Positions 13,207 through 42,900 of a DNA stretch of 64,000 nt are shown here, piece after piece; positions within the stretch are counted from its first letter, which is position 1, and each line of letters starts with the position of its first letter. The notes under the pieces are model-generated. The model was given only the letters and a program-made list of their open reading frames with translations. It had not been told where the DNA came from and searched no databases. Both the position numbers and the translations under genes were made by a program. The DNA is from Selaginella moellendorffii (Eukaryota; Plantae; Lycopodiophyta), in contig NW_003314280.1 in the NCBI RefSeq assembly GCF_000143415.4, forward strand, positions 1,550,894-1,614,893. Reading direction: 5' to 3'.

Positions 13207-16145
13207 ATGGGACGGAAGTCCGAGGCCAGATCGGCCGTGGCGGTGAAGGTATGGGAGATTGTGAGCTTAGAGCGAGCGGTGTGAGGAGCGATGAAGAATT
13301 CGGCAGATTCTGAGGTCCCCCAGTCGCCGCGCTTGAGCTGATCGAGCAAGGAATTCGTTGTGAAGTGATCTTCGTTTTCGGTTTGTAGGAAGGGAATGCG
13401 GCACCCGGAGACGAAGATTACGAGCTGCTCTACTCCAAGGATTATGTTGCGATCCATCCGAGCTGGAACGAGAGAATCAATGGCCAGCTGCGGCTCATCA
13501 AGCAGGGATTCTCGGTTTTCATGGTAAATGTATCATAGAAATCGTGATCCGGGGGTCTAAGCTCTTCTCTCTCTTTTTTTTTCATGCTTAGTCGTGGATG
13601 CCTTCCAGCGATCCAGGAAGGAAACAACGAGGGCCGAGTTTTGAGAGAGGTAAGCCAGTGACTTCTCATACGATGCTCCTTTAAGTTGACTTTTCTCCCA
13701 GATAGAAGTCTGTACACTATCCGGGCTGTTGCTCTGGAAGAGATGAAGTCTATAAGACGGCACACGCCTCCTTTCGGCTGGCAGTACATCATCGTTGTTT
13801 TAAACAGTGGTATGTTACTTCTTCTTCCCTTAGATCTCTGTTGTGACTCATTTACGATGGCTGCAGGACTGGCTTTTCCGCCCCTGTACTTTCACAATGG
13901 CGGTGTCCGTGAGTTTCTGGGAACTTTGCGGGAGTATTCGCAGCTTGGGAGGTTTGTAGACCTGTGTCTCCTTTCTACTGCGCACTCAAGTTGTTTGTGC
14001 AGGGCTGGTGACGATCCAAATGTGTATCTTGTGAATGACATCCAAGATCCATTGCAGGTTTGCCGTGCTGGTTTTCTTTACTATAATCGTTGATTATGTC
14101 TCCTGCAGAAAAGTCTTTCGTCATTGGAACTCGCAGATGTTCCTCGGGCGTCACTCATGCCAATATCCAGAGCCACGAAAACTGAGATTATGGAGGACAA
14201 GCCACAACGCTCAGAAGATGATTCGACTAGCAATGACAATGTTCAACGACCTCCCAGGCATAGAGATCCGAACTTCTCTCTTCAAGTTCTGGAAAAGTTT
14301 TCAATGGTTACAAAGTTCGCCCGTGACACTACCACCCAGCTCATGAATGGTCTAGAAACCTTAAACGTGGAAAACGCGAAGCGACCTAGCACGCTGACGA
14401 TGGAAGCTGTGCCGGAGAGGATAGTTTCTTTTCAAGAAGCAGCAGCAACCTCAGAGGTTAGTTTCACTACATTCCACCTTCATCCTCTATGTGTGGTGCT
14501 TCAAGTTTTTAATAGCTGCTTAAGCATATAGTGTTAACTTTCTGCAGCAAGGTGAGAATGGAGAAGCATCCACTAACGTGGGCAGCTTTGAGCTTGTGGA
14601 TGGCACTCAGGTACTCGACTTTAACTCTAAATGGTTTTCTAGAAATCCGTCCCTGTCCTGTGTAAAAGTGCCTTGTATTCTTCGGTTTCCTAACTTAGTC
14701 AATGCATGCAGGAGGATGAGCTGCCAGATATTATGGCGGCAAGAGAACCACCCTTGGGTAAATCGGAGGTATGTTTTATAATGTCATTCTTTTCATCCTG
14801 TATTCACTAGCTATGTTCCAGTGGAATTCTTTTCTGGATGGCGAAGGGCGTGTTACTAATCCAAACGAGTTGAAGAAGAGAATCTTTCGAGGAGGAGTAG
14901 AACCGTCTATGCGACCTTTGGTAGATATTGATTCCGCATTAGTTTCTCCAGTCATTTGTTTTATTTCTTTTTGCAGGTTTGGAAGTTCTTGCTTGAGTTC
15001 TTCTCTTTTGATTCAACGTCTAAAGAGAGAGATGCTCTGTTAGTGAAGAGAAGAGAAGAATACCGCGTTTTGAAGGCACAATGGCAGGTACCAAACGTTC
15101 TTTTTTGTTGGTCCTTTTTTCATAGACTTCTCTCTGGTTTCTTAGAGTGTCTCAATTGAGCAGGCAAAGCGGTTCAGCAAGTTCCGAGAACGCAAGAGTC
15201 GCATTGAGAAGGATGTGGTATGTCAATACGATTGGCGTGCAATGTAACCATCTTCTGTTACTCCTTGTATAGGTACGAACTGATCGAGCAACAGAATTCT
15301 ATGGTGGAGACGACAATCCCAACGTCGACATGCTCCGAGATATTCTAATCACCTATTCTTTTTACAACTTTGATCTGGGCTACTGTCAGGTATGCAAGCA
15401 CGTAGCACGAGCTGTTAAATAACCCACTGTTTTCTTACAGGGGATGAGCGATCTGCTATCACCAATTCTTTTTGTAATGCGAGACGAAGAGGAAGCATTC
15501 TGGAGCTTTGCATCTCTCATGGAACGACTGGGTCCGAATTTCCACCGTGATCAAAATGGCATGCACTCTCAGCTTCTGGCTCTTTCGAAGGTACTCGCAT
15601 CCTCTCCTCCCGGGGTTTTAATTTAGTTGTATGTGCAGTTGGTGCAGCTTCTAGATCCCCCACTGCAAGAATACTTCGGCCAAGTGGAGTGCTTGAACTA
15701 CTTTTTCTGCTTCCGCTGGATACTGATACAATTCAAAAGGTGAGCTTATCGTTTTTCCCGTCTGCTCCAGCGTAACGTTTTCTTGTCCAGGGAGTTCGTG
15801 TATGACGACGTCCTGGCGCTGTGGGAGGTGCTTTGGACGAGACACATGTCAGAGCACTTCCACCTCTACATCTGCGTCGCGCTGCTCAAGCGACACCGCA
15901 GGAAGATCATGGACGAGCACATGGTATTCGATACGCTGCTCAAGTTCATCAACGAGCTGAGCGGCCACATCAACCTGGTGTCAACGCTGCACGGCGCGGA
16001 AACGCTGTGCAGACTGGCTGGCGATGCCGGTGCCGCGTGCATACCTCCAGGAACGCCCCCGGCTCTGTCTCGCGACCCTGGTGCCGCGTGCATCATACCT
16101 CCAGGAACGCCCCCGGCTTTACTAGTAGCCCCCGCTCAGTCGTAA
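13207..16145 (+). CDS. Rab GTPase-activating protein, TBC1D15/17 (Gyp7)-like, multi-exon
   Basis: N-terminal YSKDYVAIHP...ERINGQLRL; PPLYFHNGGVREF; IEKDVVRTDR; GYCQGMSDLLSP; FCFRWILIQFKREF. Confidence 0.93.
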
Positions 16146-16265
16146 GTAGCTCGCTCGGCTCGGCTCGGCTCGACGAGAGATAGATTGCGAGGGAGAAGGG
16201 GTATGTAAATACATCGTCCGTCTTATACATGCGTTTTCCTTGTTTTTGTTTCAGCACAGATGTTT

Positions 16266-17383
16266 CTAAACAAGATCGTTGCATCCAGATTTGTCCCCGT
16301 AGCTCCTGGTATCGGTGGGACACTGGCAAGTGAAGCGAAAGAGAGAGGAAGAGTTTTTTTGCGAGAAAGCTTTGGAGCAACTTACCGTGAATTGCAGCGA
16401 TGGTGGACACTTTCGGACGACGTCGTAGCAGAGATCGAAGCAGGGGTTGACGACGTAATCCGGCGACGTTCCTCCGTATCCCCAGATGAGGTCGGCCTTC
16501 ATGCCGGCTTTGGGATTGGTGGTGGCGTTCTTCCTGGGTATGCTGAAGTGAAAGGGGTAAGGTATGCATTTGGGGAACTGGATCGCACACATCTGGATCA
16601 AGGAAAAAACGAATGTGAAGAACACAAGGCTTTCGTTTCCGTTTTTTTTTCCTTTCTTTCTTTACCCAGGTTGTGTATGCCGCGATGCAATCGTTGCAGG
16701 TCCATAGAGTGACGTCGCGGCAGTTCCCCAAAGAGAGAAGATCCTGCCATAGTTTTTCTCGTCTTTCTTTCATCGGCAATGTGAGAGTTCCGTGTTTGTT
16801 ACCTTGAGACGATCGACTTGGCACTTTGCGTAGTTGTCCTCCTTTTTGCCGACGGCCAAGCCGCCCAGTCCAGCGCCAATCTCATTCCTGGTCTGGTAGG
16901 TAATTCCCAGTGGCGAAATCACATCTAAGAGAAGAACAAGGAGGTGGTAAACGTTTTCTATGGCCACCATTCTCCAAAGACGAGAGAGTTACCCACTGTA
17001 GCAAAACCACGTCGGGTCCGTCGCCACGTTGGTCGTCTGGCAGCTCCAATAAGCAGTGTCACAGCTCTCCTGAATCAATCACGAATGAATCAATCCGCCA
17101 GGGAGGGATCCAATCCAACCCAGGTCCAGAGAAAAGAATCCAATCCACCTGCGTGTAGTCGTAAATGTAGTCCCCATTGCTATCTGTGACGGGCATAGCG
17201 GTGCACGGCGACGTCGGACCAGTGCCGCAATCCGGCGAGAGGATCACCTGCGCAAGCTGCGCCTTGGCTAGCCCAAGAAGCGCTGTGTGTAGATAGAATG
17301 GTATAGATTAGAATCGAGGAGAACCGACAGATTCTCTTACTCGAGAGCCCAGCCAGCAAAATCCATGCCGCAGTAGCCTCCAT
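16266..17383 (-). CDS. Secreted Cys-rich Mid1/FAM155(NALF)-like protein, 7 exons, 237 aa
   Basis: Exons 17383-17341, 17282-17149, 17069-16997, 16924-16803, 16743-16666, 16592-16386, 16322-16266 join by GT-AG into an open frame. Signal peptide, then TCNDCIAAYTTWMCAIQFPKC...NPCFDLCYDVVRKCPPSLQFTCP....YG...GCN, the Mid1 cysteine pattern. Confidence 0.8.
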
Positions 17384-17598
17384 TGTCCGCGAGGAAGAAG
17401 AAGGGGGAAACTTTTGAAAGATCAAAGGGCGGTTGACCTAATAAAATTAACGGGTGGATCCTCTGCTACGTGTCCATCTATTTCTATGCCACGTGCCTTC
17501 CATATCCGCCGTTTATGGAAAAAAAGAAGGGATTTTACATTGACAAAATCTTGCCTGTCTCGCTGGCCGGCTTGTTTTTTTTTCTTTTACTCTCTGTT

Positions 17599-20500
17599 TC
17601 ACTGCGGCACATCGTTGCCAAATCTTTGAGCGAGAAATGCGTCTAAATCTTTGCCTGCGTTGCCTTGTGCTGGGTCGATTGGATCCGATGGGAGCCCCCG
17701 GATGCAAGCTAGAATGTGGCTCACGTCGCGGTATAGCCTGGAAATAAAAAGACCATCAATCCAAGAGACGATCCAAACACTATAATACCACCTTCGGTCT
17801 CCTTGAGGAGTCGATACTTCCAGGCTCGAGAACGTTTCCGTGAGTTGGGTGTGGAATATCAACACCACCCGGCTGAAAGAGAGACATCGAAGGTTAGATA
17901 GAACAGCCAAAGAGAAAAACGAAAGAGGATGGATACGTAACGAGAAAATGGAGCGAAGGTCGTCCTCGAGCAGTAGCGGCGACAGCACCCTGTGCAAGAC
18001 TCCCACCTCCTTAGTGAGAGTCCGAGCAAACTGGCTGGGCTGTGCGTCTGCGTCGTCGGGAGCGGCTTTGTTCCATCCTTCCACGACCTGTGGTAGAATT
18101 CTTAGATGTACCTGGAGCCTCTCTTTCATGATTTGTACGAGCTTTGTGTGGATCTCTTCCCTGTGGACTTTATAATCCTGCGATAACAAAAAGAGTACTC
18201 GTGTTAGGAGATGAGGAGGAGCCGAGCTCTACCTGAGCAATCCGATCCAGCTCGTTTAGCAACAAGGCCTTTCTCGGGTCCGGAATAAACACAGACAGTA
18301 CTTTCTTCATCTCTACACAGAGAAAAACTTAGCGAGAGATTGACAACAGACATTGTTGGTACGAACCAGGAATGAGCACGTGGAAGAAAGTGATCGTCTG
18401 GCTCGCCAGTGCCAAATGCTTGGCAGTGATGGATTTCAACCCCGAAACCTGCGTAAAAGAACTTGTCAACCTTGCTTCAATCGATCACGTAAACTACCTG
18501 AAGAGCGCCAGCTCCTAGTACTAGTTGGCAAGCGCGAGAATTAAAGACCTTCAAAATTTCGGCAACACGATGAACCACCTCCGCTGCTAAGGCCGGCAGG
18601 GCGTTGCTCAACTCCACATACTCGGCAATCATTTTCAGAAGAATCAAGCCACTGCAGTTCGAACAGAAAATTAGCTCGCGTCTACCACATCTTTCCACGT
18701 ACCTGTTTACCGTATGGTAGCCTATTTGCCCGATTCGAATTGTCTTTATAGACTTTTCCCGGAGCTTCTTATCCACGGTAGTCACTGTGCTGGAGTCCGT
18801 CTCCAACTTCTCATCATGTGGCGCAATACTGCCTCCATTTTCAACTGGTTGACACTCGCCATTAGCCTCAGAATGACTCTCGGCTTCCCCATTCTCAAGC
18901 GAATCGTCAAAAATAAAAACTTTGTCGACGATTTCTTGAAACTCGTCAGGAATATCAACTGCAACCCATGTTTCTTGATCTAACACCGCGGTGATCTTGG
19001 TTATCTGGAACACATTATAGTGAGACATTTACATTTGTGGAAGTAGCTTACCCGAAGTATGTGCTGAGAATCAACAAAGGACTTGGACTGAGACTGCAGG
19101 GTGCCACGAATGCTGTATCCCAACCGACCTCCCACCTGAGAAAGGCAAGTTCGCAAGAACTTTACATGCTTCTTCAAAGTTTACCTTTTCAGTAGCAGCG
19201 ATGAATTCCTGTGTCACGTCGTGAATGCTTACAAACTCTTGTAACCGTAGCTTTGGATGAACAGGTGCCCGAACACCAAGTAGCTTGACCCAGCGACCAT
19301 GGGCAGCATCGCATGCAGCCCACAGTGCTTCGGTGTTTTCGCGCAACACATCCGCCCTTGAAAGCAAAGGTTAGAGGCCAGGCAGATTTCTCAATAAAAA
19401 AAGTACCTGAACTGCTTAGATATACTTGAAAGTTGAACCCCTCTTCCTCTTAAATTAAGAGGATCGCTATCTGTAACAATTTGCGCCAAGGATCCTTGCG
19501 GTTCTACTTCTTCTGCAGCTTCAGCAGCGGCGACAGCAGCGGCGACGGCAGCGGCACCAGAAGCAAATGCTGCGGCAACAGCTTCGGCGGCAGACGTTCC
19601 TTGTAGGCCGCTTACAATTTGCTCCACTAATTGTCGAATTTTGGCAGCTCTCACCAAGCGCGTCTGTGACGCCCATGTTAGACAAACGGAAGGCTTAGAA
19701 CTCCTCCAACCTGAATGATTTTGAATACTGCGACAAGGAGTTGTACGAAGGCATCCGGAGAAAGACTTCGCAATTTTGCAGCAAGGTTTAGTCCGGAAAC
19801 TGCCACAAGAAATTAACTGGAACATCAGATGATGCATGAAGGTTATTTACGTACCATCTATTTCGGTTTGCTTCTCTGTTGCAGGAGAATCACCAGAAGA
19901 CCGATTCAAAAGAATTGGAAGGCATTCAGCTACTACGGTTTTGATTGCAGACTTGACATCTGTGGTTAATGTGTCCTTGTAAACCTTCAAAACGGCGGGT
20001 AGCTTTGACTGCCATCGCACGTAAATCAAACATGAGCTTTTGCCATTAGAAACGATAGAACCTACTGTTCTCAATAGGCCGATTACAAATGGTACAAGCA
20101 GCTCGCGAAGGTTGGTTTCCTCCTCTTCGTTGACTTGCACCTGAGAAAATCGGTAAGTAATTTGACAGACTTCATATCAACAACTCACCTCTACAGACAT
20201 GCTGTAAAGCTTGTCTTTCATGTTAAGAGATGAGATAATCACTGAAGAGTTGAGATCTTTGGAGTTATGTATGGCAATTCTTACAAAATCAGCTGCTAGC
20301 ATGCTGCCAAAGGAGAAGGTGCGAACGTCAACATCATAACTAACCCTTCAAGACCTTACTTGTTTACAGAATCCGTCGATGCTGCCAGTTGATCTCCCAG
20401 ATGCCGGAAGCAATGCATTCCAGCAAGCTCATCGCCTTCCTACACCAAAGAAGTAAAGTCAATCGAAAGTGCTCGATAACCCTGCAGCACATACTCACAA

Positions 20501-32360: not shown

Positions 32361-34224
32361 TGATTTCGTTGAGGAACGCGCCGGAGACGTAGATGTATCT
32401 TCTAGCTTGGACTTTTATGTGTGGAATTAGCCGTTTGTGTCTGTTGCATTGCAATATGATGACAATCGTGGTGTATGCAACGCAAAATAAAAAACCTATC
32501 CAGTCTAACACGTAACAGTCGCTGGAGACTTCACAGTTATGGCATGTTAGAAATTCAAGTCCAGCTTTAATGTTCAAAGTCCAAGGGCTGGAGGATTTAC
32601 CTTTAGCATCTTAGGACCTCAGAGTGGCCTGGGTGGGGAGATGGAAGAACGTGAGGGTGGGAGTGGAGGGAGTGAGAAGACCCCATTACAAACTTGCAAA
32701 CTTGTTTGCACAGTCTCATGCTTCTTGTTGAAACTGCCAAAACAGAATGTAAATAGATAGATAGATTTTCTGTGAAACCAGAGCAAACAAAAACTTTTCA
32801 CGTTTACTCAATTAAGGAATAGCTGTAAGTTGGATAACAACACCCCAAAATCATAATTTTGCTAAACTCGCAATCTGGTCCTTGTGGATTGCTCCTAGGA
32901 GGCAATTGTCACCAAGGATTGGCATGCTTTCTGACGCTACTGGAGCTCTTCGTGGAGTTTGTGAAGCTGGCATAGCTCATCTATTGGCGGGTCTCCTGGA
33001 GGATTTGTTGGAGATTATAAAGAATGTAAAATCAAAATATTATGTCCATGTTAGAGGGCGACCAAAGGAGTGGGCATTAAACTCCTGACATCTGTGAACA
33101 ATGTGTGTGCTTGCTATAATCACAAACTCATGAACAAGTTTTGCATAGCTTATCTGATCTAGATTGGAATAAGATTGAGCTCTTTGTTGGCTCCAAACTG
33201 TAAGTTCTCGTTGTTTGTCCTTGTTCTTTTGTTGCTAGATTCAAAGTCACGCACACAAGTATTTCTTGAAGGTCCAGGAGAACACGTACCACCTGTGATC
33301 GCTTGCCAAGAATCACGTGATGCTGCTCCTACCCATCGAGGCAAATCGTGACGGATTTGGACCCTTAAAAAAGAAAATTTTCTTTCTTAATAATTTGGGT
33401 AGCAATTTCTATCCAAAGGCCTAAGGTCATCGAGTTTTCATTGAGTCCTTCCACTCAAAGCAGTGAGGCTTTTAGTTGCCCAAGAAACTGATACACTGCT
33501 GTGATTGAAATTGGTGTCAGTGTTCAAGGAGGTACTGCAAAACGAAGAAGAGGCTATACTGTTGATATCCACACTCCCAAGCTGGTATAATATTTCTGGT
33601 AGCATGATTTTTCTCTGGTCTTTGGAGGGAAATCCAAACTACTTGAAGCTAAATAACTAATTAATTTCCTTTTATGTTAAAGTTGAATTTGAAACTTTAC
33701 AAATGCTTTTAATTAGAATTTTTAATGTTTTGTCATTTTAGTAACAATATTTATTACTATAAAAAATTAGAAAGTTTTCTAAAAAGTTTTAAAACAGTTT
33801 TAGATGGTAGTGGATATACCTAGAATATTCTTGGATATTCTAGGATATTCTACCATCTAATGGTTGTTATTTATTTAGATTAATCTTGTATTTATAATTT
33901 ATAAACATATTTATAATTTATGAACTTTCTTAAACCCTTTCTAGTATATTATTTTTTATTTTATTATCTAATGGTTGATATGCAATAAGATTAATTTTGT
34001 GTTTATAAATTATAAACATGCTTATAATTATAAACTTTATTTGATCAATTAGATTAATAAGTAATACTAAAACTACCATTAAGAAAACCAAGCATTGCTA
34101 CATGCAACATGTAGCAATTTATTTTTACTATCTCCAGCCAATTAATAATTATTGAAGGTTCAAAAATATATTACATCAATTAAAGTTTTTATAAAATATT
34201 ATTATTAAGAAAGATAAAATTTGA

Positions 34225-36070
34225 TGATATGAGGTCCAAGTATATAGCTATGATGCTGTATACTAATATTAAAATAGTGAAATTTTGATAGCCATCAAAT
34301 TGGTTTCAATCCGGAGCACTCACTCTTGTATATAAACTAAGGTTTTTGGGTTAATTGATATTCACATTTATGCATTCATATTGGTGGACGTAAGAGGCAA
34401 TTTTGAATGCTCTTGAGGAGTGTTAAGATTTAAGATTTTGATTTAAATATAACTTTTGCATTGTTTAGATCTCCTTTTTTCTTATTGCTTTTCTTAACTT
34501 CTTTTTTTTTACTCTTTCCTTTTCATTTATCTTCATGGCAGAGTAGTAGCCTTCTCCTCATTTAACTTTAGAGCAATAATTAGTGCAATTGCTTAATACT
34601 ATGTAGTTGTAGTTGAACAATCAGACTTAATTGATAGCAACATTCATGGTGTGTGGTACAAGCTTTTGTTGCTAATCCTCGTTTTCGGCCGAAGTTCTTC
34701 TATGGAAGGATGATATATACTATTGGTTTGATCACATCATGATGATTGCCATATATCATTCATGAGATGATGCTTAATGTTTGAGTGAGTTTCCAACGTG
34801 TTTTCAAGGGACGGCATTGTAGTGGTACAATGGTTTGACTACAGCCACTTGTGAGGATTAGATATTATCCTAGATGTCTTGAAACATATATTCGGACATG
34901 CTGATAATTGTGATAATGTTTTCTAACAATTGTAGTATTTTTGTCAAGGGCCATTTGAGTCAGTGATGCAATTTAGCATTCATTTTCAAAGCCTTTTGCT
35001 TCGTGAAAAGCCAAATATGTCAAAGTGGATCAAGCTAGAAATATTCTAGCTAGCACTTTGTCAAGATTTGGTAGGAATTGTGCATGCACTTGCTCTAGCC
35101 ACTCTTGATGATGCTCTTTGCTTGGCACAACATTATAAAATGTCATCTTTTCCACTAGTTGCATGTTCTTTAGCTCCATTTCTTATGGGAGATAGTCTTG
35201 TTCTAATGGAAGTTGATGCTACTACTACTCAAGTTTAAGGATTAGAACAAAAATATGGTCATGGCTATGATGTCTACTGTTGGGTATGTGATAAAGTTGG
35301 TCACACTTATCAGTGTTATCAGTGTTTTCCAGATTGGCAACCTCTATTTCCTAGATAAAGACCTTGGTGTCAACGTCTTGTTAGTGTTACTCCAGTGGAA
35401 GGTTTGGACATCAAGATACATTTGGGAAATGAGGAGTCATACAAATAACAAAGGGACTTTGTGCAAATAAGTCAGTAACCCCTCCATTTTTCTTTCAGGA
35501 GTATCATCAAAGGGTTTATTTGACATCAATTCATTTAATGTTTATTTTCCAAATTCATTTTTATAATAAAAAGTCTCTTATTATTCTCTTTGTGTTGGTT
35601 AATATAGACTCAAGTTTATCCTTTATTGCTCGACCTATTATGATATGTGGTTTATCTAAGGGGCTCTTTGCTCAGTGGAAAGGACCATATCATGTGTTGT
35701 GGCAACTTGGATTGCAAGTTTATGAAGTTCGGCATAACATTTAATAAACCAATCCTTCATAAATTATACATGTGCAACGGCTAAAGCACTTTATACAAAG
35801 GTATTAAGAATAATTGACACCACTTATAGATCCACCAATGCCTTCTTTTGATATTCTTTTGAATCCCGACCTATCTATAAAAGAACTTTAATGGTCTTTC
35901 ATCATTCTAAGAGGAGGGGATGATATGGGTTTAAGTGTACAACTACAATACTATATATTAATATTACTATAATGAGATTTTGGTAGCTATCGGATTGGTT
36001 TTAATTTAGACCATTTGCTTTTGTATATAAGCTAGGGTTTTTGGGCTAATTGATATGCATATTTTTTATA
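34225..36070 (+). mobile_element. Degenerate small non-autonomous LTR retroelement (Ty3/Gypsy-derived)
   Basis: Diverged ~150-bp direct repeats starting TGATATG at 34225 and 35921; PPT AAGAGGAGGGGA before the 3' copy; integrase GPY-like remnant QWKGPYHVL at ~35675. Confidence 0.65.
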
Positions 36071-36849
36071 TTCTCTTTCTATATTCCATGCACTTATAAT
36101 AATTTATTTATTAAATAAATAAATTATTTGATTTTTTTATAACCTCTATAGAAATGTAATATACACATTTAAACATAACATCTAAATAAAGTATAAAGTA
36201 TCTCTTCAAAGTGATAATCAATAAATAATTATTTGATTGTTTTGATGTATTATAAGAAGAGAATTTGTAAAAATGAGCATTATTGTTATGCTAGTACAAA
36301 TTCAATTGGAAAAGATGACTTCATCTAAAAAATGGTTTTAATTATATTTAGTAATGTTATTATTGTTTTTAAAGAATCAATAAATTTTTTATTGTGGGAC
36401 AATGCAAATACTTTTTAAAATGTATAAAATAGTAAGATAAGTACTTTTTTAACCATTATATAAATAAAAATTTTAAATTAATTAATTAAATAAATCAGAA
36501 TATTGAAAAAAATATTTGAAAAAAGTTTTAATTTCTCCAGAAATATATATAATTTCCAATAATTATATTAAATTCACCTCTTTATGGTGTATATTTAGTC
36601 ATTCTCTTTGCAAAATTATAAGCATTTTAATTCATATTAAGCATTTTCCTTTTTGTATAATAAGAAAAAAATTAAACACATCATAATAAGATTACAATCA
36701 AGTAACTTCTATAAAATTTATAATGAAGTTATTTTATGAATCCTTAATAATGAATACTTACTTTTTCTGTCTTATTTAAGGGAAATAAATTCATATTTCT
36801 TTATGCTACAATATTGAAAAGTGTGAATATAAAACTATTCACATTAAAT

Positions 36850-37200
36850 TATCTCTAAAGCCTAGTTTATATAAAAAATAAATTGAAACTAATTTTAAGG
36901 CTTATTACATTAATAATAGTGTCATTGTATATCAAAATTTCATATCATCCACTCCTCTTAGAAGGATAGAAGGTAATTAATAAGCTAGGATCTAAAGGAC
37001 GCATTAAAAGATCCATAAATGGTGCAATACATTTCTTATCCTTTTATATAAAGCCTTTTTGTTGTTATATATCTATATTTTTTAAAAGATTAATTTGTTG
37101 AACATTATACTAAAATTTATAAACTTGTGCCATAACACTTAATATGGTTCTTTTTATTGAGCAAGAAGCCCTTTAAACAAACTATATACTATAAGATTGG
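36850..37200 (-). mobile_element. Inverted second remnant of the same LTR family (3' end plus LTR)
   Basis: Reverse-complement similarity to 35660-36050 (e.g. TCATATCATCCACTCCTCTTAGAA vs TTCTAAGAGGAGGGGATGATATG). Confidence 0.55.
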
Positions 37201-37539
37201 GAAAATAAATTAATACTAAATCATTCATTTTCTGCTTTATAGGTGGACAATGATGACAATTGTCCTAAACATGATTGTGGGTATTGAAAGTTACCTATTA
37301 GTGAATCATTTTGGATATTTTTCTTTTACTATTAAAATGGTATTAAAGCTTTAAACTATTATTAGAATGCAAGTGACTAAATTTTTTACTCTACTTTAAT
37401 TACTTAGCTATACTTTTAACCGCTTGAAAGAATCTCATAACCTCCATATATCTTCATCCCAACTTAGGGTACTTACTAATACCCCAAAGTTAGCCTTCCC
37501 ACTACCTTACCTTAAGGAGTGAAGTGATAGAAGTATGGA

Positions 37540-38330
37540 GCAATTTAGAACTATCTTAGAGCATTTAACAACCTAATTCTTGGACTAATAGGTAAAATAG
37601 AGTTAAATAGAGTTTATCATTATTTTAACATACTGATGGTATAATACAAGGATATGGATATTCCATTAGTTAGCATGGTGTGGAGCTTAGGCTTAAATCC
37701 AAGTTGAATGCAAAACAAAGATAGGCATGTAAACAAAAGTTAAATTATGTCTTAAGTTGGTTAACCATATCTAATCTACCCACTATCTCTATTATACATT
37801 TAGAACCCCCCACAGCCCCCTTTTGAGAAATGCACTCTTTGGGTTTTCACCCCAGTCTTAGAAGTTAGTCTTTAGGATAATCACAAAAACTTATTAAATA
37901 TAGAATAGTGTTAGATTGCGAATTTGGATATAGGAATAATACCATTGTGTTCAAAACAATCTCTACATTCCATTAATATGTCTAGCTTGCAAATATAGAT
38001 ACTTTTTATGAATAGTTAATAGAATCAAACAGAATCAATACATAGGGGATGATAGTGATGGTGTTTGGCAAACATAGTGAACTATCATTTGGTGATATTG
38101 AGGAATTAATTTCAATATATAAGGGTTTTTTACAAGCTAATGCAAGACAGAGCAAAAGAGAATTAAAAGCTATGTTGAGTACGCTCAGCAAAAAATACAT
38201 AAGAGTTCCTACCTTATGTTTATCTGACTAGGTGTAGATGCAAAGCCCAATTTACTAATACTTGAATAAGAGGGATTGAAAAGGGAACTAACAATACCAA
38301 TCTCTTGCTATTGTGGTAATAAAAGAAGAA
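37540..38330. repeat. Retroelement terminal-region relic, related in reverse complement to 52260-52650 and 54500-55110
   Basis: Shared blocks, e.g. CTTTGGGTTTTCACCCC and AATATAGAATAGTGTTAGATTGCGAATTTGGA vs 54920-55020. Confidence 0.6.
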
Positions 38331-39914
38331 TATTTGAAAGGATTTGCTAACAAACAACTTTCAATATCCATAATTTCATTCACAACACTCTTTCCCCCCC
38401 TTTAGGGAATATTAACATCCTTATCAATGTATATTCTAATCTAGACCATTACCAAAGAAACAACTCTAGAAAAAGTTTATGGTGTTCACACTTTGTGAAA
38501 AATCCACTAACTTAAATGAGTTAGGGGGTAACCTCTTTGTTTAACATAAATGCACTATAACTCAGACACTTTTCAGCCATCACCGACAAAGAAATGACCA
38601 ATAGAGTCAACCATCCTTACCGCTCTAGGTATCATCTAACTTACAAAAGATGATATGCTTATGTCTACAGATGATATAAAGAGAGAAGTTAGAGGCCCCA
38701 AACCTCATAAATAAGCAAACCAAACCTATCAATAAGGTTTAGATAGATTTATTTAGAGTTGTTTACATAGTCACACTATTTAGTAGAATAAAGAACATCT
38801 AGAGAGACACAAGTTATGTGAGTAGTCAACAATAGTTATTCTATTACTAAAAATTTCACTATACACACGAAGTGTTGAAGTCAGTTTGCCTTTATTGACC
38901 CAAACCTAAAGGTCAATAGATGGACACTATCAAAGTCATAAACAAAGAAATATGAAAGACAACAAATTATTAGTGAAGAAAGTTTACATTAAAACACAAA
39001 AGTATTCCAAGTAAGCTATTATTTGATAAACCAATATAGTAGAGGAACTGCTAAGATTACAAGAGTTTAAAATCATAAAATTAACCATCTAACAAAATTC
39101 AATAACAAAAAACTTAATGATAAAGTTTAACTACCAAAGATTGCAGATAGCATGCTAAAAACTTATGAGAGGCACCTCAAAGAACATAAAATATCATCGA
39201 CTAGCAACAAAATGCTTACAAATATATTTTTTAAAGGAAATAACATTCAAATCTATTAGAACCAATTGTAACAACAATCAATAAAATATAATAAATGTTA
39301 GAAGGGCAAATAAATACTTGTTCATATCAACAGTTGTGCTAGCTAATCTAAATAAATTCTAATCAACAATATTAAGGAATCAGAGTTGTTTAAGAAAGAG
39401 TCGACAACATCTTACCAATATCTTAAATCTAACAGACCAATCCAAAATAAACCACAAAGAATATGTGATAATAAGCTCTATTTCGTTAAAGTGGGAATTG
39501 TCATTATCCCACTTGTAAAATAAGGTTTCCAAACCTTTATATAGTATATAAATATAACAAAATTCAATTGCATTGAGGCACATGCCATTTTATTTTAAAC
39601 AAGGAAATGTCTACTCAATCACTTCTCCTCCCCCTGCCACTGCTTCATCTCTCTCTTCTCCTTGTCATCGTCGTCCAATTTCTTTCCATCCTTTTAATAT
39701 TGGCTCAGTTGCTCCGAGTCTAGGTGGAGCCCAAGTCCCCATTCAATCTTTACTTTCCCCTTATTAATAAAACAACTTCGTAGACTTCCAATAACATGCT
39801 ATAACACTTCTAGTATAATGCAAATCCTCTCAAAGAATTGTCTTTTAATATTAATACAATGGCATGGAACCCCATGCCATAATAAGTTACATTTTTAAAT
39901 AAATACATGCCATC

Positions 39915-42900
39915 TCAGACTGTTATTTTTTGCCTCCAACGCCTATACAATAATCTTGGAATTTCATCACTCTCCACACTATCAGGATTTAAACCCAATA
40001 GTAATGCCATCTCTTCTCTAATACGTCCACGCTCATGTTCAGTGGTCGAAGAACCCATCCGGTTGAGCAGATTATGGAGATGCAGATAGTGCTTGGCTAG
40101 ACAATATACATGCCATAAATGATGACTGCTGTCTGTCCGATCAAATGGCTTCTGATATACCGTTCCATCTGCCATTTGGTTGATTTCTGCAGCCACCTCC
40201 TGGACTGGCCGGTTCTTTATCACCATCGCTCCAAGCCGTTTTGCAAGGTCCCCCAGAACATACGGTTTCTTCTCCCTAGTTTCCATACTGCAAGAGATGG
40301 GGTGCACTGCATATGTGTGCGTGTTCGCTGCTGTTTTAATCGGCGAGTCATCGATGATGAGGATTTCACTTGAGCTAGCAGTCCGGTTCATCACTACAGC
40401 CTCTGGCTTGACGAAGATGGGCTTGCTACCCCTCACATGGACCATAGTCAAGCAATCCTCCTGCGTTAGGAGAAAGTCAAATGGTAATATTACTCGCGTC
40501 TGATCGTACATCATCTGTAGCAATGTTAATGCATTGTGGTGCATCATAGATGTCCAAACTCCCAATTGCAAATTGAACCCGGCCCTCTGTTTTAAGTGTC
40601 GCATGGTCATTATTAGATCCCGCAGTTTCTCCCGTGTGATTAATGTGAATCTGTCTCTTTTGACCAACTTGCGACCGCAGGCTTTGGAGGGTGCAATGAC
40701 ATTCGAGGACGAGCCACGCTCATGGGAGAAAAGGACACCGTTTAGATCAAAAACGATACAGTACCTTCGCCATGACTCTGAAATGAAATGCATCAGCATA
40801 AAAAATGGTACAAGTCAATTTTACCATCTACAATATTAGCGAATGTTGCTCCCGATGGTCGTTGAGAGGGTTTTGGTCGAGGAAACGTGAAGGGCGGAAA
40901 TACTCTCCTCTACAATATGGGGTCAATCACATCCGATGGTGTGTGGGCACATGCCATTTCAGCTGTAGACTCTGGTACAACTGGCTCAACAGTGGCATGG
41001 GGTGGTTCCGATGGCGTGTGATCACACGCCATTTCAGCTGGTGCCTCCGTTGGCAAAGTGGACATGACCGAACAGGCAGCAGGGGCGGTGTAGGGAGGTT
41101 CCAACGGCGCGTAGTCAGACGATTGGGCACACGTTGAGTCCGTTGGAAATGAGGATACGACCGGCTCGGCGGCTGGGGCGGCCTCATGTGGGTCCAATGG
41201 CGCCTGGTCACTGTCAGTTGGATACGTGGACAAGATTGACTCAGTGGTATGGGCAGCATCAAGTGGAGCGTGGTCAGCTTGCTTGGCGTTGATATGGATA
41301 GTAGCCTCCACCAGCTCTGATGACTCTTGCAGCCAAGTAGAGTCCACTGGCGGATCCATATGCATGTCCAAATATCTCCCTTCGATTGAGATGGTATCCT
41401 CCCGTGCTACTAAAAACAAACTCATTAGCACATTGAATCGACTATACTGTATTTACCATCAACTGCTATTGAGGAACTAGGACCGATATCACTTGGGCGC
41501 ACTGCTGATTCTGAAGGATTGGACATACGTTTCGACCCTTGCTTGGCACTATCCTTCCTCGACACTAAAGGCTAGAGTTTGTAAATTCAACTGAATAATC
41601 TTTACTTACCATTTGCTCTGCGACCTACATGGACAATGTTTGAAATGGTAAAAGGTTAGGAATGGATGTACTATTATTTACCTGATGGTTTGTCTTGTAT
41701 GACCTTCCTCCGCTGCTCTTTGGCCACCTCAGGCTGGCCATCGTCGTCATCATCGTCATCGTCGTTATTGTGATCGTCACCATTGTGAGGACCATCCAAG
41801 TCCTCTTCGTCCTCCTCTTCTTTGTCCTCCTCTTCATCCTTCTGCTCTTCCTGCTCATTATCTTTCTCTGGCTCCTCATCCCCCTCCTGCATTTCTTCCA
41901 TAGGCTGCTCAGGCTGGATGGCTTGTTCTTCCAGGACCATCTTGGGAAAATCATCAGGCCGAGTCTCCATCTCAAAATACAAGACATCCATAGCCTGTTT
42001 TAGTGCGTGACCTAGGACCGTATCCTCACCCGACTGTCTTAACATGGTTTCTGCACGTTCTTGCACCCTTCGAAGACGACGAGATGAGAAAAACGTGGCC
42101 CTGACTTGAAAAGCATCCCTCATCCATTGTACCTCTCCATTGAGATTGGGGAAGGGGAGTCCGTTATAGGAATCTGAGTCATGAGGTGGTGACTGCCTGC
42201 TTTCACTCAGCCCTTGATCTGCAATGAATGGCATGAGCACACACGCCATAACTGCGAGGCATTACCTATCATCTTTTCGTTGCCCTTCTTCTTTTTCGAA
42301 TCAAACGCCTCTGATCTCGACGACTGTCCAACGTGCTTTCGCTTTTTATGACCACTGTCAGTTTGAGCTTGGCTGGTGCTTGCCTGTTTTGCCTTTGAAG
42401 AAGTTTCTCTTGCAAGGAATGGCATGAGACCACACGCCATTGCAAATATAATTTGTACCTCCTTTTTTCCTATTGCTTGTCTGTTTGTCCTTCTTCGATG
42501 CGCCACCAGTGCGCTTTTCAGTCCTCGTGTCTGAATATTCACAACGATCTATAATCAAAATGGCGTGAGGCCTCACGTGACCTTACCTTGTGCAGGTTGT
42601 GAGCTCGGCCCAACATGGGTATCTTCAACAGTAGCTGTTAACGCCGTTTCAGCATCTGGGGGTGGCCACGCTCCTGCATACAGAGCTTGTGAGATAACAT
42701 TTAAACTTAAAGTGTGTACTCACCAAGTTCGCAGAGAAGATACTGTTTTTCTTTGGCAACTGTAATTATATGCTCCATTGAAGTCACCTCTTCAATGGAG
42801 TTTGTCACCGCAACACATGGGACACCCTTGAGTAGTGCGGCTCGAAAGAATAGTCCGCCGCAGTTGTACTCGACAACGCATTTGCCCTTGGAGTCGGAAG

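What the first reader, a model, noticed from the sequence alone, without database searches (positions are those of the whole stretch)
16266..17383. A Mid1/FAM155(NALF)-like calcium-channel auxiliary subunit in a land plant
Seen: an intact 7-exon, 237-aa gene hidden from the ORF track, with a signal peptide and the pattern C..C..AY..W.CA..FP.C...PC..LC..VV..CP....F.CP....Y.....CN. No C-terminal TM or GPI-like tail is evident. Known: this Cys-rich domain defines fungal Mid1 (partner of Cch1) and animal FAM155/NLF-1 (partner of NALCN). Angiosperms lack these four-domain channels, and plant MCA proteins complement mid1 without being homologous. Inference: either a retained ancestral subunit of a four-domain channel (perhaps in motile sperm) or an old horizontal acquisition from fungi.
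Basis: partly seen in the sequence, partly recalled or inferred. Interest (0 to 1): 0.78.

Follow-up and report, generated by a model that had tools for sequence, protein, structure and literature searches.

The report
Mid1/FAM155-type channel helper gene in spikemoss
This spikemoss (Selaginella moellendorffii) gene is intact and under purifying selection, and it encodes a small secreted cysteine-rich protein of the Mid1/FAM155 family, the outer helper of Cch1/NALCN-type channels in fungi and animals, which the latest published survey did not report in plants.

Summary
A 7-exon minus-strand gene (17383..16266, all introns GT..AG, 58-79 nt) encodes 237 aa. It differs at one residue (E2G) from the public Selaginella moellendorffii protein EFJ26939.1/D8RLL1.

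The family call holds too:
- Pfam Mid1 (PF12929) scores 59.9 bits against a cutoff of 28.6; exon 6 alone passes.
- BLASTP against cryptophyte Mid1-like genes gives 71 bits and 38% identity over 120 aa, with ten invariant cysteines.
- A profile of these sequences hits only FAM155A chains in the PDB, weakly.

The protein has a signal peptide, 16 Cys, one N-glycosylation site, and no transmembrane or GPI-like tail.

The two haplotypes differ by 7 synonymous and 1 nonsynonymous change (pN/pS 0.04), and every indel lies in an intron.

Published supplementary data place several Selaginella, Marchantia and Physcomitrium four-domain channels beside the NALCN/Cch1 group. The three angiosperm proteomes I checked there contributed none. 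A candidate partner therefore exists in this genome.

Not shown here: binding, sperm expression, the gene's range among plants, and transcript proof of introns 3-6. Structure prediction failed.

RefSeq already names the gene "stretch-activated cation channel MID1", but only as truncated isoforms. The scan noted what appears to be the same gene on the other haplotype scaffold (s1-408274, s1-374919). I rate it a new member of a known kind.

The parts
16266..17383 (-). Whole coding gene, ATG to TAG: 7 exons, 237 aa (Selaginella moellendorffii; allele of SELMODRAFT_412474 / D8RLL1)
17341..17383 (-). Exon 1 (43 nt): start codon and most of the signal peptide
   Evidence: Removal of intron 1 is supported by the 8-nt loose end TCGAGAGC of X1 contig record 4.
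17149..17282 (-). Exon 2 (134 nt): end of the signal peptide (likely cleavage after AKA, residue 21; inferred) and the first two Cys
   Evidence: The joint 17068->17148 in an X1 contig confirms intron 2.
16997..17069 (-). Exon 3 (73 nt), ending at the GT donor 16996-16995. An alternative GT at 16992-16991 would break the frame.
   Evidence: No read crosses this junction. The frame is supported.
16803..16924 (-). Exon 4 (122 nt)
   Evidence: Both haplotype differences here are synonymous in the modelled frame.
16666..16743 (-). Exon 5 (78 nt): start of the conserved block WTCNDCIAAYTTW
16386..16592 (-). Exon 6 (207 nt, 69 aa): core of the Mid1 domain, MCAIQFPKC ... CFDLCYDVVRKCPPSLQFT, with the NAT sequon at residue 172
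16266..16322 (-). Exon 7 (57 nt): CPTDTRSYGDKSGCNDLV plus TAG; hydrophilic end, no anchor
16299..16707 (-). Genomic span (with introns 5 and 6) coding residues 137-227, the stretch matched to Pfam Mid1 PF12929 positions 312-416 of 433
16146..16801 (+). Not part of the gene but overlapping it: the long 3' UTR of the convergent RabGAP-TBC gene. It is antisense to exons 5-7, has its own intron at 16200-16287, and has a poly(A) end near 16801.

Best explanation
This is a real, selectively maintained Selaginella moellendorffii gene for a secreted, disulfide-rich protein of about 216 residues after signal-peptide removal. It belongs to the Mid1/FAM155 (NALF) family.

The most likely mechanism is by analogy with fungal Mid1-Cch1 and animal FAM155A-NALCN. 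The three-helix cysteine-rich core would be residues about 111-128, 137-155 and 200-211. It would dock on the extracellular loops of one of the plant's own four-domain cation channels, which lie in the NALCN/Cch1-containing clade. There it would help the channel fold, traffic or gate, probably in a rare cell type such as the motile sperm.

Shown: gene structure, family membership, purifying selection, low-level spliced transcription, and presence of candidate partner channels in the same genome (from published data).

Inferred: secretion, binding to the channel, the cell type, and vertical inheritance.
For: - Pfam Mid1: 59.9 bits, E 3.2e-16, cutoff 28.6 for P0020. Exon 6 alone, by window reference, scores 29.3 bits.
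- BLASTP to cryptophyte Mid1-like ORFs: 71 and 68 bits, 38% and 34% identity over about 120 aa.
- Alignment A2 has invariant Cys at 82, 132, 140, 143, 152, 159, 201, 205, 212 and 220, and an identical CYDVVRKCP. All ten A2 members hit Pfam Mid1.
- The same motifs are present in yeast Mid1p, Rhizopus and other family members printed in Senatore 2025 Data S10.
- Profile A2 against the PDB returns only FAM155A chains. The pieces are collinear, but E is only 0.28-1.9.
- The ESM Atlas's nearest structural and feature neighbours are fungal Mid1, FAM155A and an oomycete 'FZ domain' cluster.
- Haplotypes: 7 synonymous and 1 nonsynonymous change, pN/pS 0.042, P = 2e-4. All 24 indel columns lie in introns. 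Introns diverge by 3.7% and exons by 1.1%.
- Spliced transcript piece: intron 2 by a joint and intron 1 by a loose end.
- Neighbours are ordinary plant genes: Vps54, RabGAP-TBC, PPR.
- Partner channels: Senatore 2025 Data S8/S20 list 14 S. moellendorffii four-domain channel entries. These fall into at least three gene groups in one land-plant clade, next to the cryptist clade and the NALCN/Cch1 group. Arabidopsis, Populus and Amborella contribute none.
Against: - No binding test was possible.
- Both AlphaFold2 models were poor (pLDDT 41 and 36), so the fold was not confirmed by a model of my own.
- There is no membrane anchor, unlike FAM155A and the cryptist proteins with hydrophobic C-termini.
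- The Tyr-Ser motif that Senatore 2025 describe in the alpha1-alpha2 linker is not evident in LSLGNCRDVTLW.
- Two stranded RNA-seq runs have no reads at all over 16741-17481, so expression is rare and its tissue is unknown.
- No plant relatives outside this species were retrieved.
- The authors of the oomycete PpMID1 study report no Cch1 homologue in oomycetes, so they raise the possibility of a channel-independent role (PMC5395580).
Confidence: 0.55

Rival explanations
1. It is a true Mid1-family protein that works without a four-domain channel. It would be a soluble apoplastic or cell-wall cysteine-rich domain protein, for example a ligand or lipid binder or a wall-integrity factor.
For: - It has no transmembrane or GPI anchor.
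- The authors of the 228-aa oomycete PpMID1 study found no Cch1 homologue in oomycetes, and silencing it had developmental effects.
- The family is Frizzled-like, and such domains bind varied ligands. The Atlas neighbours include Frizzled-type receptors.
Against: - Wherever the family has been tested in fungi and animals, it works with Cch1/NALCN.
- The genome keeps clade-A four-domain channels.
- The helix and cysteine core that contacts NALCN is the conserved part.
Confidence: 0.25
2. The gene came into the lycophyte lineage by horizontal transfer from a fungus or another microbe, or it is assembly contamination, rather than by descent.
For: - No other plant homologue was retrieved here.
- The alpha3 block is about as similar to Rhizopus Mid1 as to the cryptist proteins, by eye.
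Against: - It is present on both haplotype scaffolds with the same plant neighbours.
- It has six short host-type introns and GC3 of 0.71.
- It lacks the long fungal N-terminal region; only Pfam positions 312-416 match.
- The family is widespread in eukaryotes: cryptists, an apusomonad and oomycetes.
- My searches were weak for distant kin, so absence means little.
Confidence: 0.07
3. It is a silent relic or an over-predicted gene model. The transcription seen over its 3' half belongs to the neighbour's antisense 3' UTR.
For: - Reads over 16000-16740 have the neighbour's strand, and the contig is unspliced with a poly(A) end at 16801.
- There are no reads over 16741-17481 in two RNA runs.
- The RefSeq isoforms are truncated.
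Against: - The frame is intact in both haplotypes with pN/pS 0.04.
- A spliced contig joins exons 1-2-3.
- All splice sites are canonical.
Confidence: 0.05

Closest known systems
Cryptist FAM155/Mid1 homologues (Guillardia theta XP_005841825.1, Geminigera, Cryptomonas; Senatore et al. 2025, PMC12412391) and their metagenomic kin L002-L022
   Same: Small size (about 200-230 aa), an N-terminal signal peptide, and the same Cys framework. The CYDVVRKCP stretch is identical. Identity is 34-38% over about 120 aa. Both match Pfam Mid1.
   Different: The cryptist proteins carry four extra Cys, and many have a hydrophobic C-terminal tail. The Selaginella protein ends right after CNDLV and has a longer loop between the alpha2 and alpha3 blocks, plus a different N-terminal half.
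Oomycete PpMID1 (Phytophthora parasitica, 228 aa; PMC5395580)
   Same: A signal peptide plus a C-terminal Mid1 domain only, much smaller than fungal Mid1. An oomycete cluster is the nearest Atlas neighbour by features.
   Different: The oomycete protein's function was shown by silencing (sporangium and zoospore formation).
Fungal Mid1 (S. cerevisiae Mid1p, S. pombe Yam8), partner of Cch1
   Same: The C-terminal cysteine-rich core. Motifs C..C..AY..W.C, C...CY..V..CP..(L/F).F.CP and CN are shared.
   Different: Fungal proteins are about 300-650 aa, and most carry a long N-terminal region (Pfam positions 1-311) that is absent here.
Animal FAM155A/NALF1 (PDB 6XIW, 7CM3, 7SX3, 7WJI), partner of NALCN
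   Same: The only PDB hits of the plant-plus-cryptist profile. The alignment is collinear over the alpha1-alpha2 region and the C..C......CP block. It is also a structural neighbour in the Atlas.
   Different: The sequence similarity is very weak (E 0.28). FAM155A is named a transmembrane protein in those PDB entries. Most NALCN-contact residues are not conserved outside vertebrates.
Plant MCA1/MCA2 (MID1-complementing activity)
   Same: They complement yeast mid1 functionally (established knowledge; PMC11663713 abstract).
   Different: They are not homologous to Mid1 (established knowledge). P0020 matches only Pfam Mid1.

Membership tests
Mid1/FAM155 (Pfam PF12929) | Significant match to the family profile above the curated cutoff | tested here: met
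   59.9 bits against a cutoff of 28.6, E 3.2e-16, residues 137-227. Exon 6 alone by window reference scores 29.3 bits.
Mid1/FAM155 (Pfam PF12929) | Conserved cysteine framework of the C-terminal domain (reported essential in yeast Mid1, as cited in PMC5395580) | tested here: met
   Ten Cys are invariant against nine cryptist homologues. The same motifs are seen in the yeast, Rhizopus, Neurospora and other sequences of Data S10 and in FAM155A.
Mid1/FAM155 (Pfam PF12929) | Three-helix (alpha1-alpha3) disulfide-stapled fold, as in FAM155A structures | tested here: inconclusive
   Helices are predicted at 111-128, 137-155 and 200-211, but the models have pLDDT 41 and 36, and Foldseek on them is meaningless. 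The Atlas's own model (pLDDT 0.55) has Mid1 and FAM155A clusters as nearest folds, with TM 0.50 and 0.43.
Mid1/FAM155 (Pfam PF12929) | Extracellular location (signal peptide, N-glycosylation) | tested here: met
   The N-terminal hydrophobic segment is the only one, there is an AKA motif at residues 19-21, and there is one NAT sequon at residue 172. No dedicated predictor was available, so location is inferred from sequence.
Mid1/FAM155 (Pfam PF12929) | Physical and functional partnership with a Cch1/NALCN-type four-domain channel | not testable with these tools
   Only co-occurrence is shown: S. moellendorffii four-domain channels sit next to the NALCN/Cch1 group in the tree of Senatore 2025.
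Mid1/FAM155 (Pfam PF12929) | Rescue of the yeast mid1 mutant | not testable with these tools
   Bench experiment.
Frizzled cysteine-rich domain (PF01392) and folate-receptor-type domains | Match to those profiles better than to Mid1 | tested here: not met
   No Pfam family other than Mid1 appears at E up to 10. There is only a weak language-model lead to an Fz cluster for exon 6 (score 0.79).
Plant MCA (MID1-complementing activity) | The domains that define MCA, such as PLAC8 (PMC8049495 abstract) | tested here: not met
   No such Pfam hit.

The most novel reading that the evidence does not exclude
Land plants that still make swimming sperm keep an ancestral two-part channel: a NALCN/Cch1-clade four-domain pore plus its Mid1/FAM155 outer subunit. 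The pair would have been inherited from the early eukaryote and lost together in seed plants without motile sperm. It would control calcium entry in sperm motility or chemotaxis. [quoted passage not shown]
Probability: 0.3. Interest if true: 0.8.

Novelty: new member of a known kind. Interest (0 to 1): 0.6.

Why it matters
Reviews state that land plants lack four-domain Cav/Nav/NALCN-type channels (PMC6259924, PMC5824947). The 2025 survey of the NALCN/Cch1 channelosome found FAM155/Mid1 only in animals, fungi and cryptists, with one apusomonad homologue known from earlier work. That survey's proteome set included Selaginella.

This gene shows that the outer subunit family is also present in a vascular plant, in a genome that also has channels of the NALCN/Cch1-containing clade.

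That makes a long-standing question testable: how calcium enters plant sperm, and what was lost with motile sperm. The test has two defined genes. It also flags that the RefSeq models of this gene are truncated, which may explain why the survey missed it.

Tried and rejected
1. Big phmmer search with exon 6 (69 aa) against 1.84 billion representatives. It found only the gene's own cluster. The other 18 hits are repeat proteins: the three I read were two WG-type repeat proteins and one tandem-repeat protein. In hindsight the exon was too short a query. Because it used the session's single job, no profile search for plant relatives was possible.
2. Three word-index searches with P0020 (whole protein, residues 60-237, residues 130-237). 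They returned only RefSeq isoform X1. This index misses even the cryptist proteins that share CYDVVRKCP, so a blank means nothing.
3. Metagenome pattern scan for C-Y-[DE]-V-V-R-K-C-P. It gave 21 loci, all cryptophyte-type and none plant-like.
4. phmmer of exon 6 and of P0020 against the PDB: nothing relevant.
5. AlphaFold2 on the single sequence and on alignment A2: pLDDT 41 and 36.
6. NCBIfam: no hit; it is a prokaryote-oriented library.
7. Complex prediction was not used. The partner channel is too long and was not held as a session sequence.
8. The share of about 0.5 of words in 'RNA?' runs is not evidence of expression. About half of the queried stretch is covered by the neighbour's antisense 3' UTR.
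9. Literature searches for the accession numbers and for plant Mid1 found no paper on this gene.

Full report
**Observation**

The finding lies on the minus strand. Reading it by hand and translating each exon by reference gives seven exons:
- 17383-17341
- 17282-17149
- 17069-16997
- 16924-16803
- 16743-16666
- 16592-16386
- 16322-16266

The six introns are 58-79 nt, all GT..AG. The exons sum to 714 nt, that is 237 codons and a TAG.

I never sent the joined window model to a search tool. Exons went by reference. For full-length work I used the public protein P0020, which listing of cluster members returned. A local script that joined the exons only counted differences, and the window model differs from P0020 at residue 2 alone (E against G).

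**Identity of the source**

The big phmmer search with exon 6 found only the gene's own cluster.
- Its representative is XP_024533159.1, named 'stretch-activated cation channel MID1 isoform X2' of Selaginella moellendorffii.
- The other cluster member is EFJ26939.1 / SELMODRAFT_412474 / UniProt D8RLL1, 237 aa.

So the organism is a lycophyte, and the gene is already in public databases.

The look-up of encoding contigs placed P0020 on GL377583.1. There the gene spans 1094 nt between Vps54 and a RabGAP-TBC gene. The window has the same neighbours. The window copy is 1118 nt and 98% identical, so it is the other haplotype of this two-haplotype assembly.

Two earlier notes of this scan (s1-408274, s1-374919) describe a 1094-letter Mid1-like gene on 'another piece'. 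By its length, that appears to be this allele.

**Family**
- P0020 matches Pfam Mid1 (PF12929) at 59.9 bits, E 3.2e-16, cutoff 28.6. Residues 137-227 match profile positions 312-416 of 433, and no other family appears up to E 10. Exon 6 alone passes the cutoff.
These are C..C..AY..W.C, then C...CY..V..CP..(L/F).F.CP, then CN. The cryptist members share an identical CYDVVRKCP with Selaginella.
- A metagenome scan for that peptide pattern gave 21 loci, all cryptophyte-type Mid1-like genes.
- BLASTP of P0020 against two of them gives 71 and 68 bits, 38% and 34% identity over about 120 residues.
- Alignment A2 has ten invariant cysteines, and all ten members hit Pfam Mid1.
- A profile of A2 against all PDB sequences returns only four sequences, all FAM155A (7WJI, 6XIW, 7CM3, 7CU3). 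They align collinearly, but only at E 0.28-1.9.
- The ESM Atlas holds P0020. It lists fungal Mid1, FAM155A and an oomycete 'FZ domain' cluster as nearest by structure and features.

My own fold test failed. Both AlphaFold2 runs were poor (pLDDT 41 and 36), and Foldseek on such a model is meaningless.

**Protein features**
- 16 cysteines
- one NAT sequon at residue 172
- a single hydrophobic segment at the N-terminus, with AKA at residues 19-21 (signal peptide; cleavage site inferred)
- a hydrophilic C-terminus, so no transmembrane or GPI-like tail

This architecture is a signal peptide plus about 200 residues, without the long fungal N-terminal region. It is that of the cryptist homologues and of the 228-aa oomycete PpMID1 (PMC5395580). 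It is not that of fungal Mid1 or animal FAM155A.

**Selection and the 16996 donor**

Between the two haplotypes the exons carry 8 substitutions: 7 synonymous and 1 nonsynonymous (E2G, in the signal peptide). That gives pN/pS 0.042, with binomial P = 2e-4 under neutrality. All 24 indel columns lie in introns. Intron divergence is 3.7% against 1.1% in exons.

Two of the synonymous changes are in exon 4, whose frame depends on the 16996 donor. With the alternative GT at 16992 the frame hits a stop after 14 codons (read). This supports the modelled splice but does not prove it.

**Transcripts**
- One contig of run X1 (169 nt, depth 3.2) joins 17068 to 17148. That is CT..AC on the plus strand, so GT..AG on the minus strand, and it equals intron 2.
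- The same contig ends with eight letters of exon 1, so introns 1 and 2 are spliced.
- Nothing crosses introns 3-6. Low-depth unspliced pieces also exist.
- Two stranded RNA-seq runs have no reads over 16741-17481.
- The reads over 16000-16740 have the strand of the convergent RabGAP-TBC gene. A contig runs unspliced from 16058 to a poly(A) end at 16801.
- That is therefore the neighbour's long 3' UTR, antisense to exons 5-7. It explains most of the 'share of words'.

The RefSeq isoforms (123 and 144 aa) start at an ATG inside intron 4 (16773-16771), and one of them retains intron 6. Their extent equals the antisense-covered stretch, so I take them for artefacts of unstranded evidence.

Because EukProt carries those RefSeq models, this may be why Senatore et al. 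missed the plant protein. Their set included the Selaginella proteome, yet they reported FAM155/Mid1 homologues only in animals, fungi and cryptists, with one apusomonad homologue known from earlier work.

**Partner**

Reviews say embryophytes lack four-domain channels (PMC6259924; PMC5824947). The supplementary data of Senatore 2025 show otherwise.
- Data S8 and the tree file S20 hold 14 S. moellendorffii entries. They fall into at least three gene groups, each seen as near-identical pairs or isoforms.
- They also hold three Marchantia entries and one Physcomitrium entry.
- These form one land-plant clade next to a cryptist clade and the NALCN/Cch1 group. In the nexus file this corresponds, as I read it, to the authors' 'clade A'.
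- Arabidopsis, Populus and Amborella proteomes were searched there and contributed none.

Earlier notes of this scan on other pieces of the genome report the same channels. I verified their existence only through the paper's files.

**Mechanism**

By analogy with Mid1-Cch1 and FAM155A-NALCN, the protein most likely caps the extracellular face of one of these channels and supports its biogenesis or gating. Low and patchy expression fits a rare cell type, but sperm expression was not tested.

The rivals, set out in their own section, are:
- a channel-independent secreted cysteine-rich domain protein
- horizontal origin
- a silent relic

**Novelty**

The family, its fold and its role are known. 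The gene is annotated, and RefSeq's automatic name already says MID1. What is not in the literature I could search is any recognition that a land plant has a true Mid1/FAM155 homologue beside NALCN/Cch1-clade channels. I therefore rate it a new member of a known kind, of moderate to good interest.

Noticed in passing
window 16146-16801 (+): The convergent RabGAP-TBC gene (stop at 16143-16145) has a long 3' UTR that runs antisense through exons 5-7 of the Mid1-like gene. It has its own GT..AG intron at 16200-16287 and a poly(A) end near 16801. Coverage falls stepwise, which suggests several poly(A) sites.
   Followed up: partly
window 16266-16801 (-), ATG at 16773-16771: RefSeq isoforms X1 and X2 (144 and 123 aa) start inside intron 4, and X1 retains the in-frame 63-nt intron 6. 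Both lack the signal peptide and the N-terminal half. Their extent matches the antisense-UTR coverage, so they look like artefacts of unstranded RNA evidence.
   Followed up: partly
L009:1646-1717 (also L015, L019, L021): In some cryptophyte Mid1-like genes an intron splits the Arg codon just before the conserved 'CP'. That is one nucleotide away from the position of Selaginella intron 6 (phase 0 after T219). It may be coincidence or an old shared intron.
   Followed up: no
window 16000-16160 and 17558-17641: About half of the RNA reads in runs X23 and X24 carry the other haplotype's letters at several sites. Both alleles of the neighbouring genes are therefore expressed in one plant.
   Followed up: no
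window 17384-17600: Only about 200 nt separate the 3' end of the Vps54 gene (coding end near 17599, reads down to about 17480) from the Mid1-like start codon. The promoter region is therefore very short.
   Followed up: no
window 34000-40000: AT-rich stretch (GC 0.25-0.32 against about 0.48 elsewhere), next to the transposon region that other notes of the scan describe.
   Followed up: no
P0020 residues 52-70: The N-terminal half holds a second, weaker copy of the motif (ESCDTAYWSC, compare CNDCIAAYTTWMC). BLASTP aligns it to the cryptist alpha2 block at E 1.4, so it may be a degenerate internal duplication.
   Followed up: no
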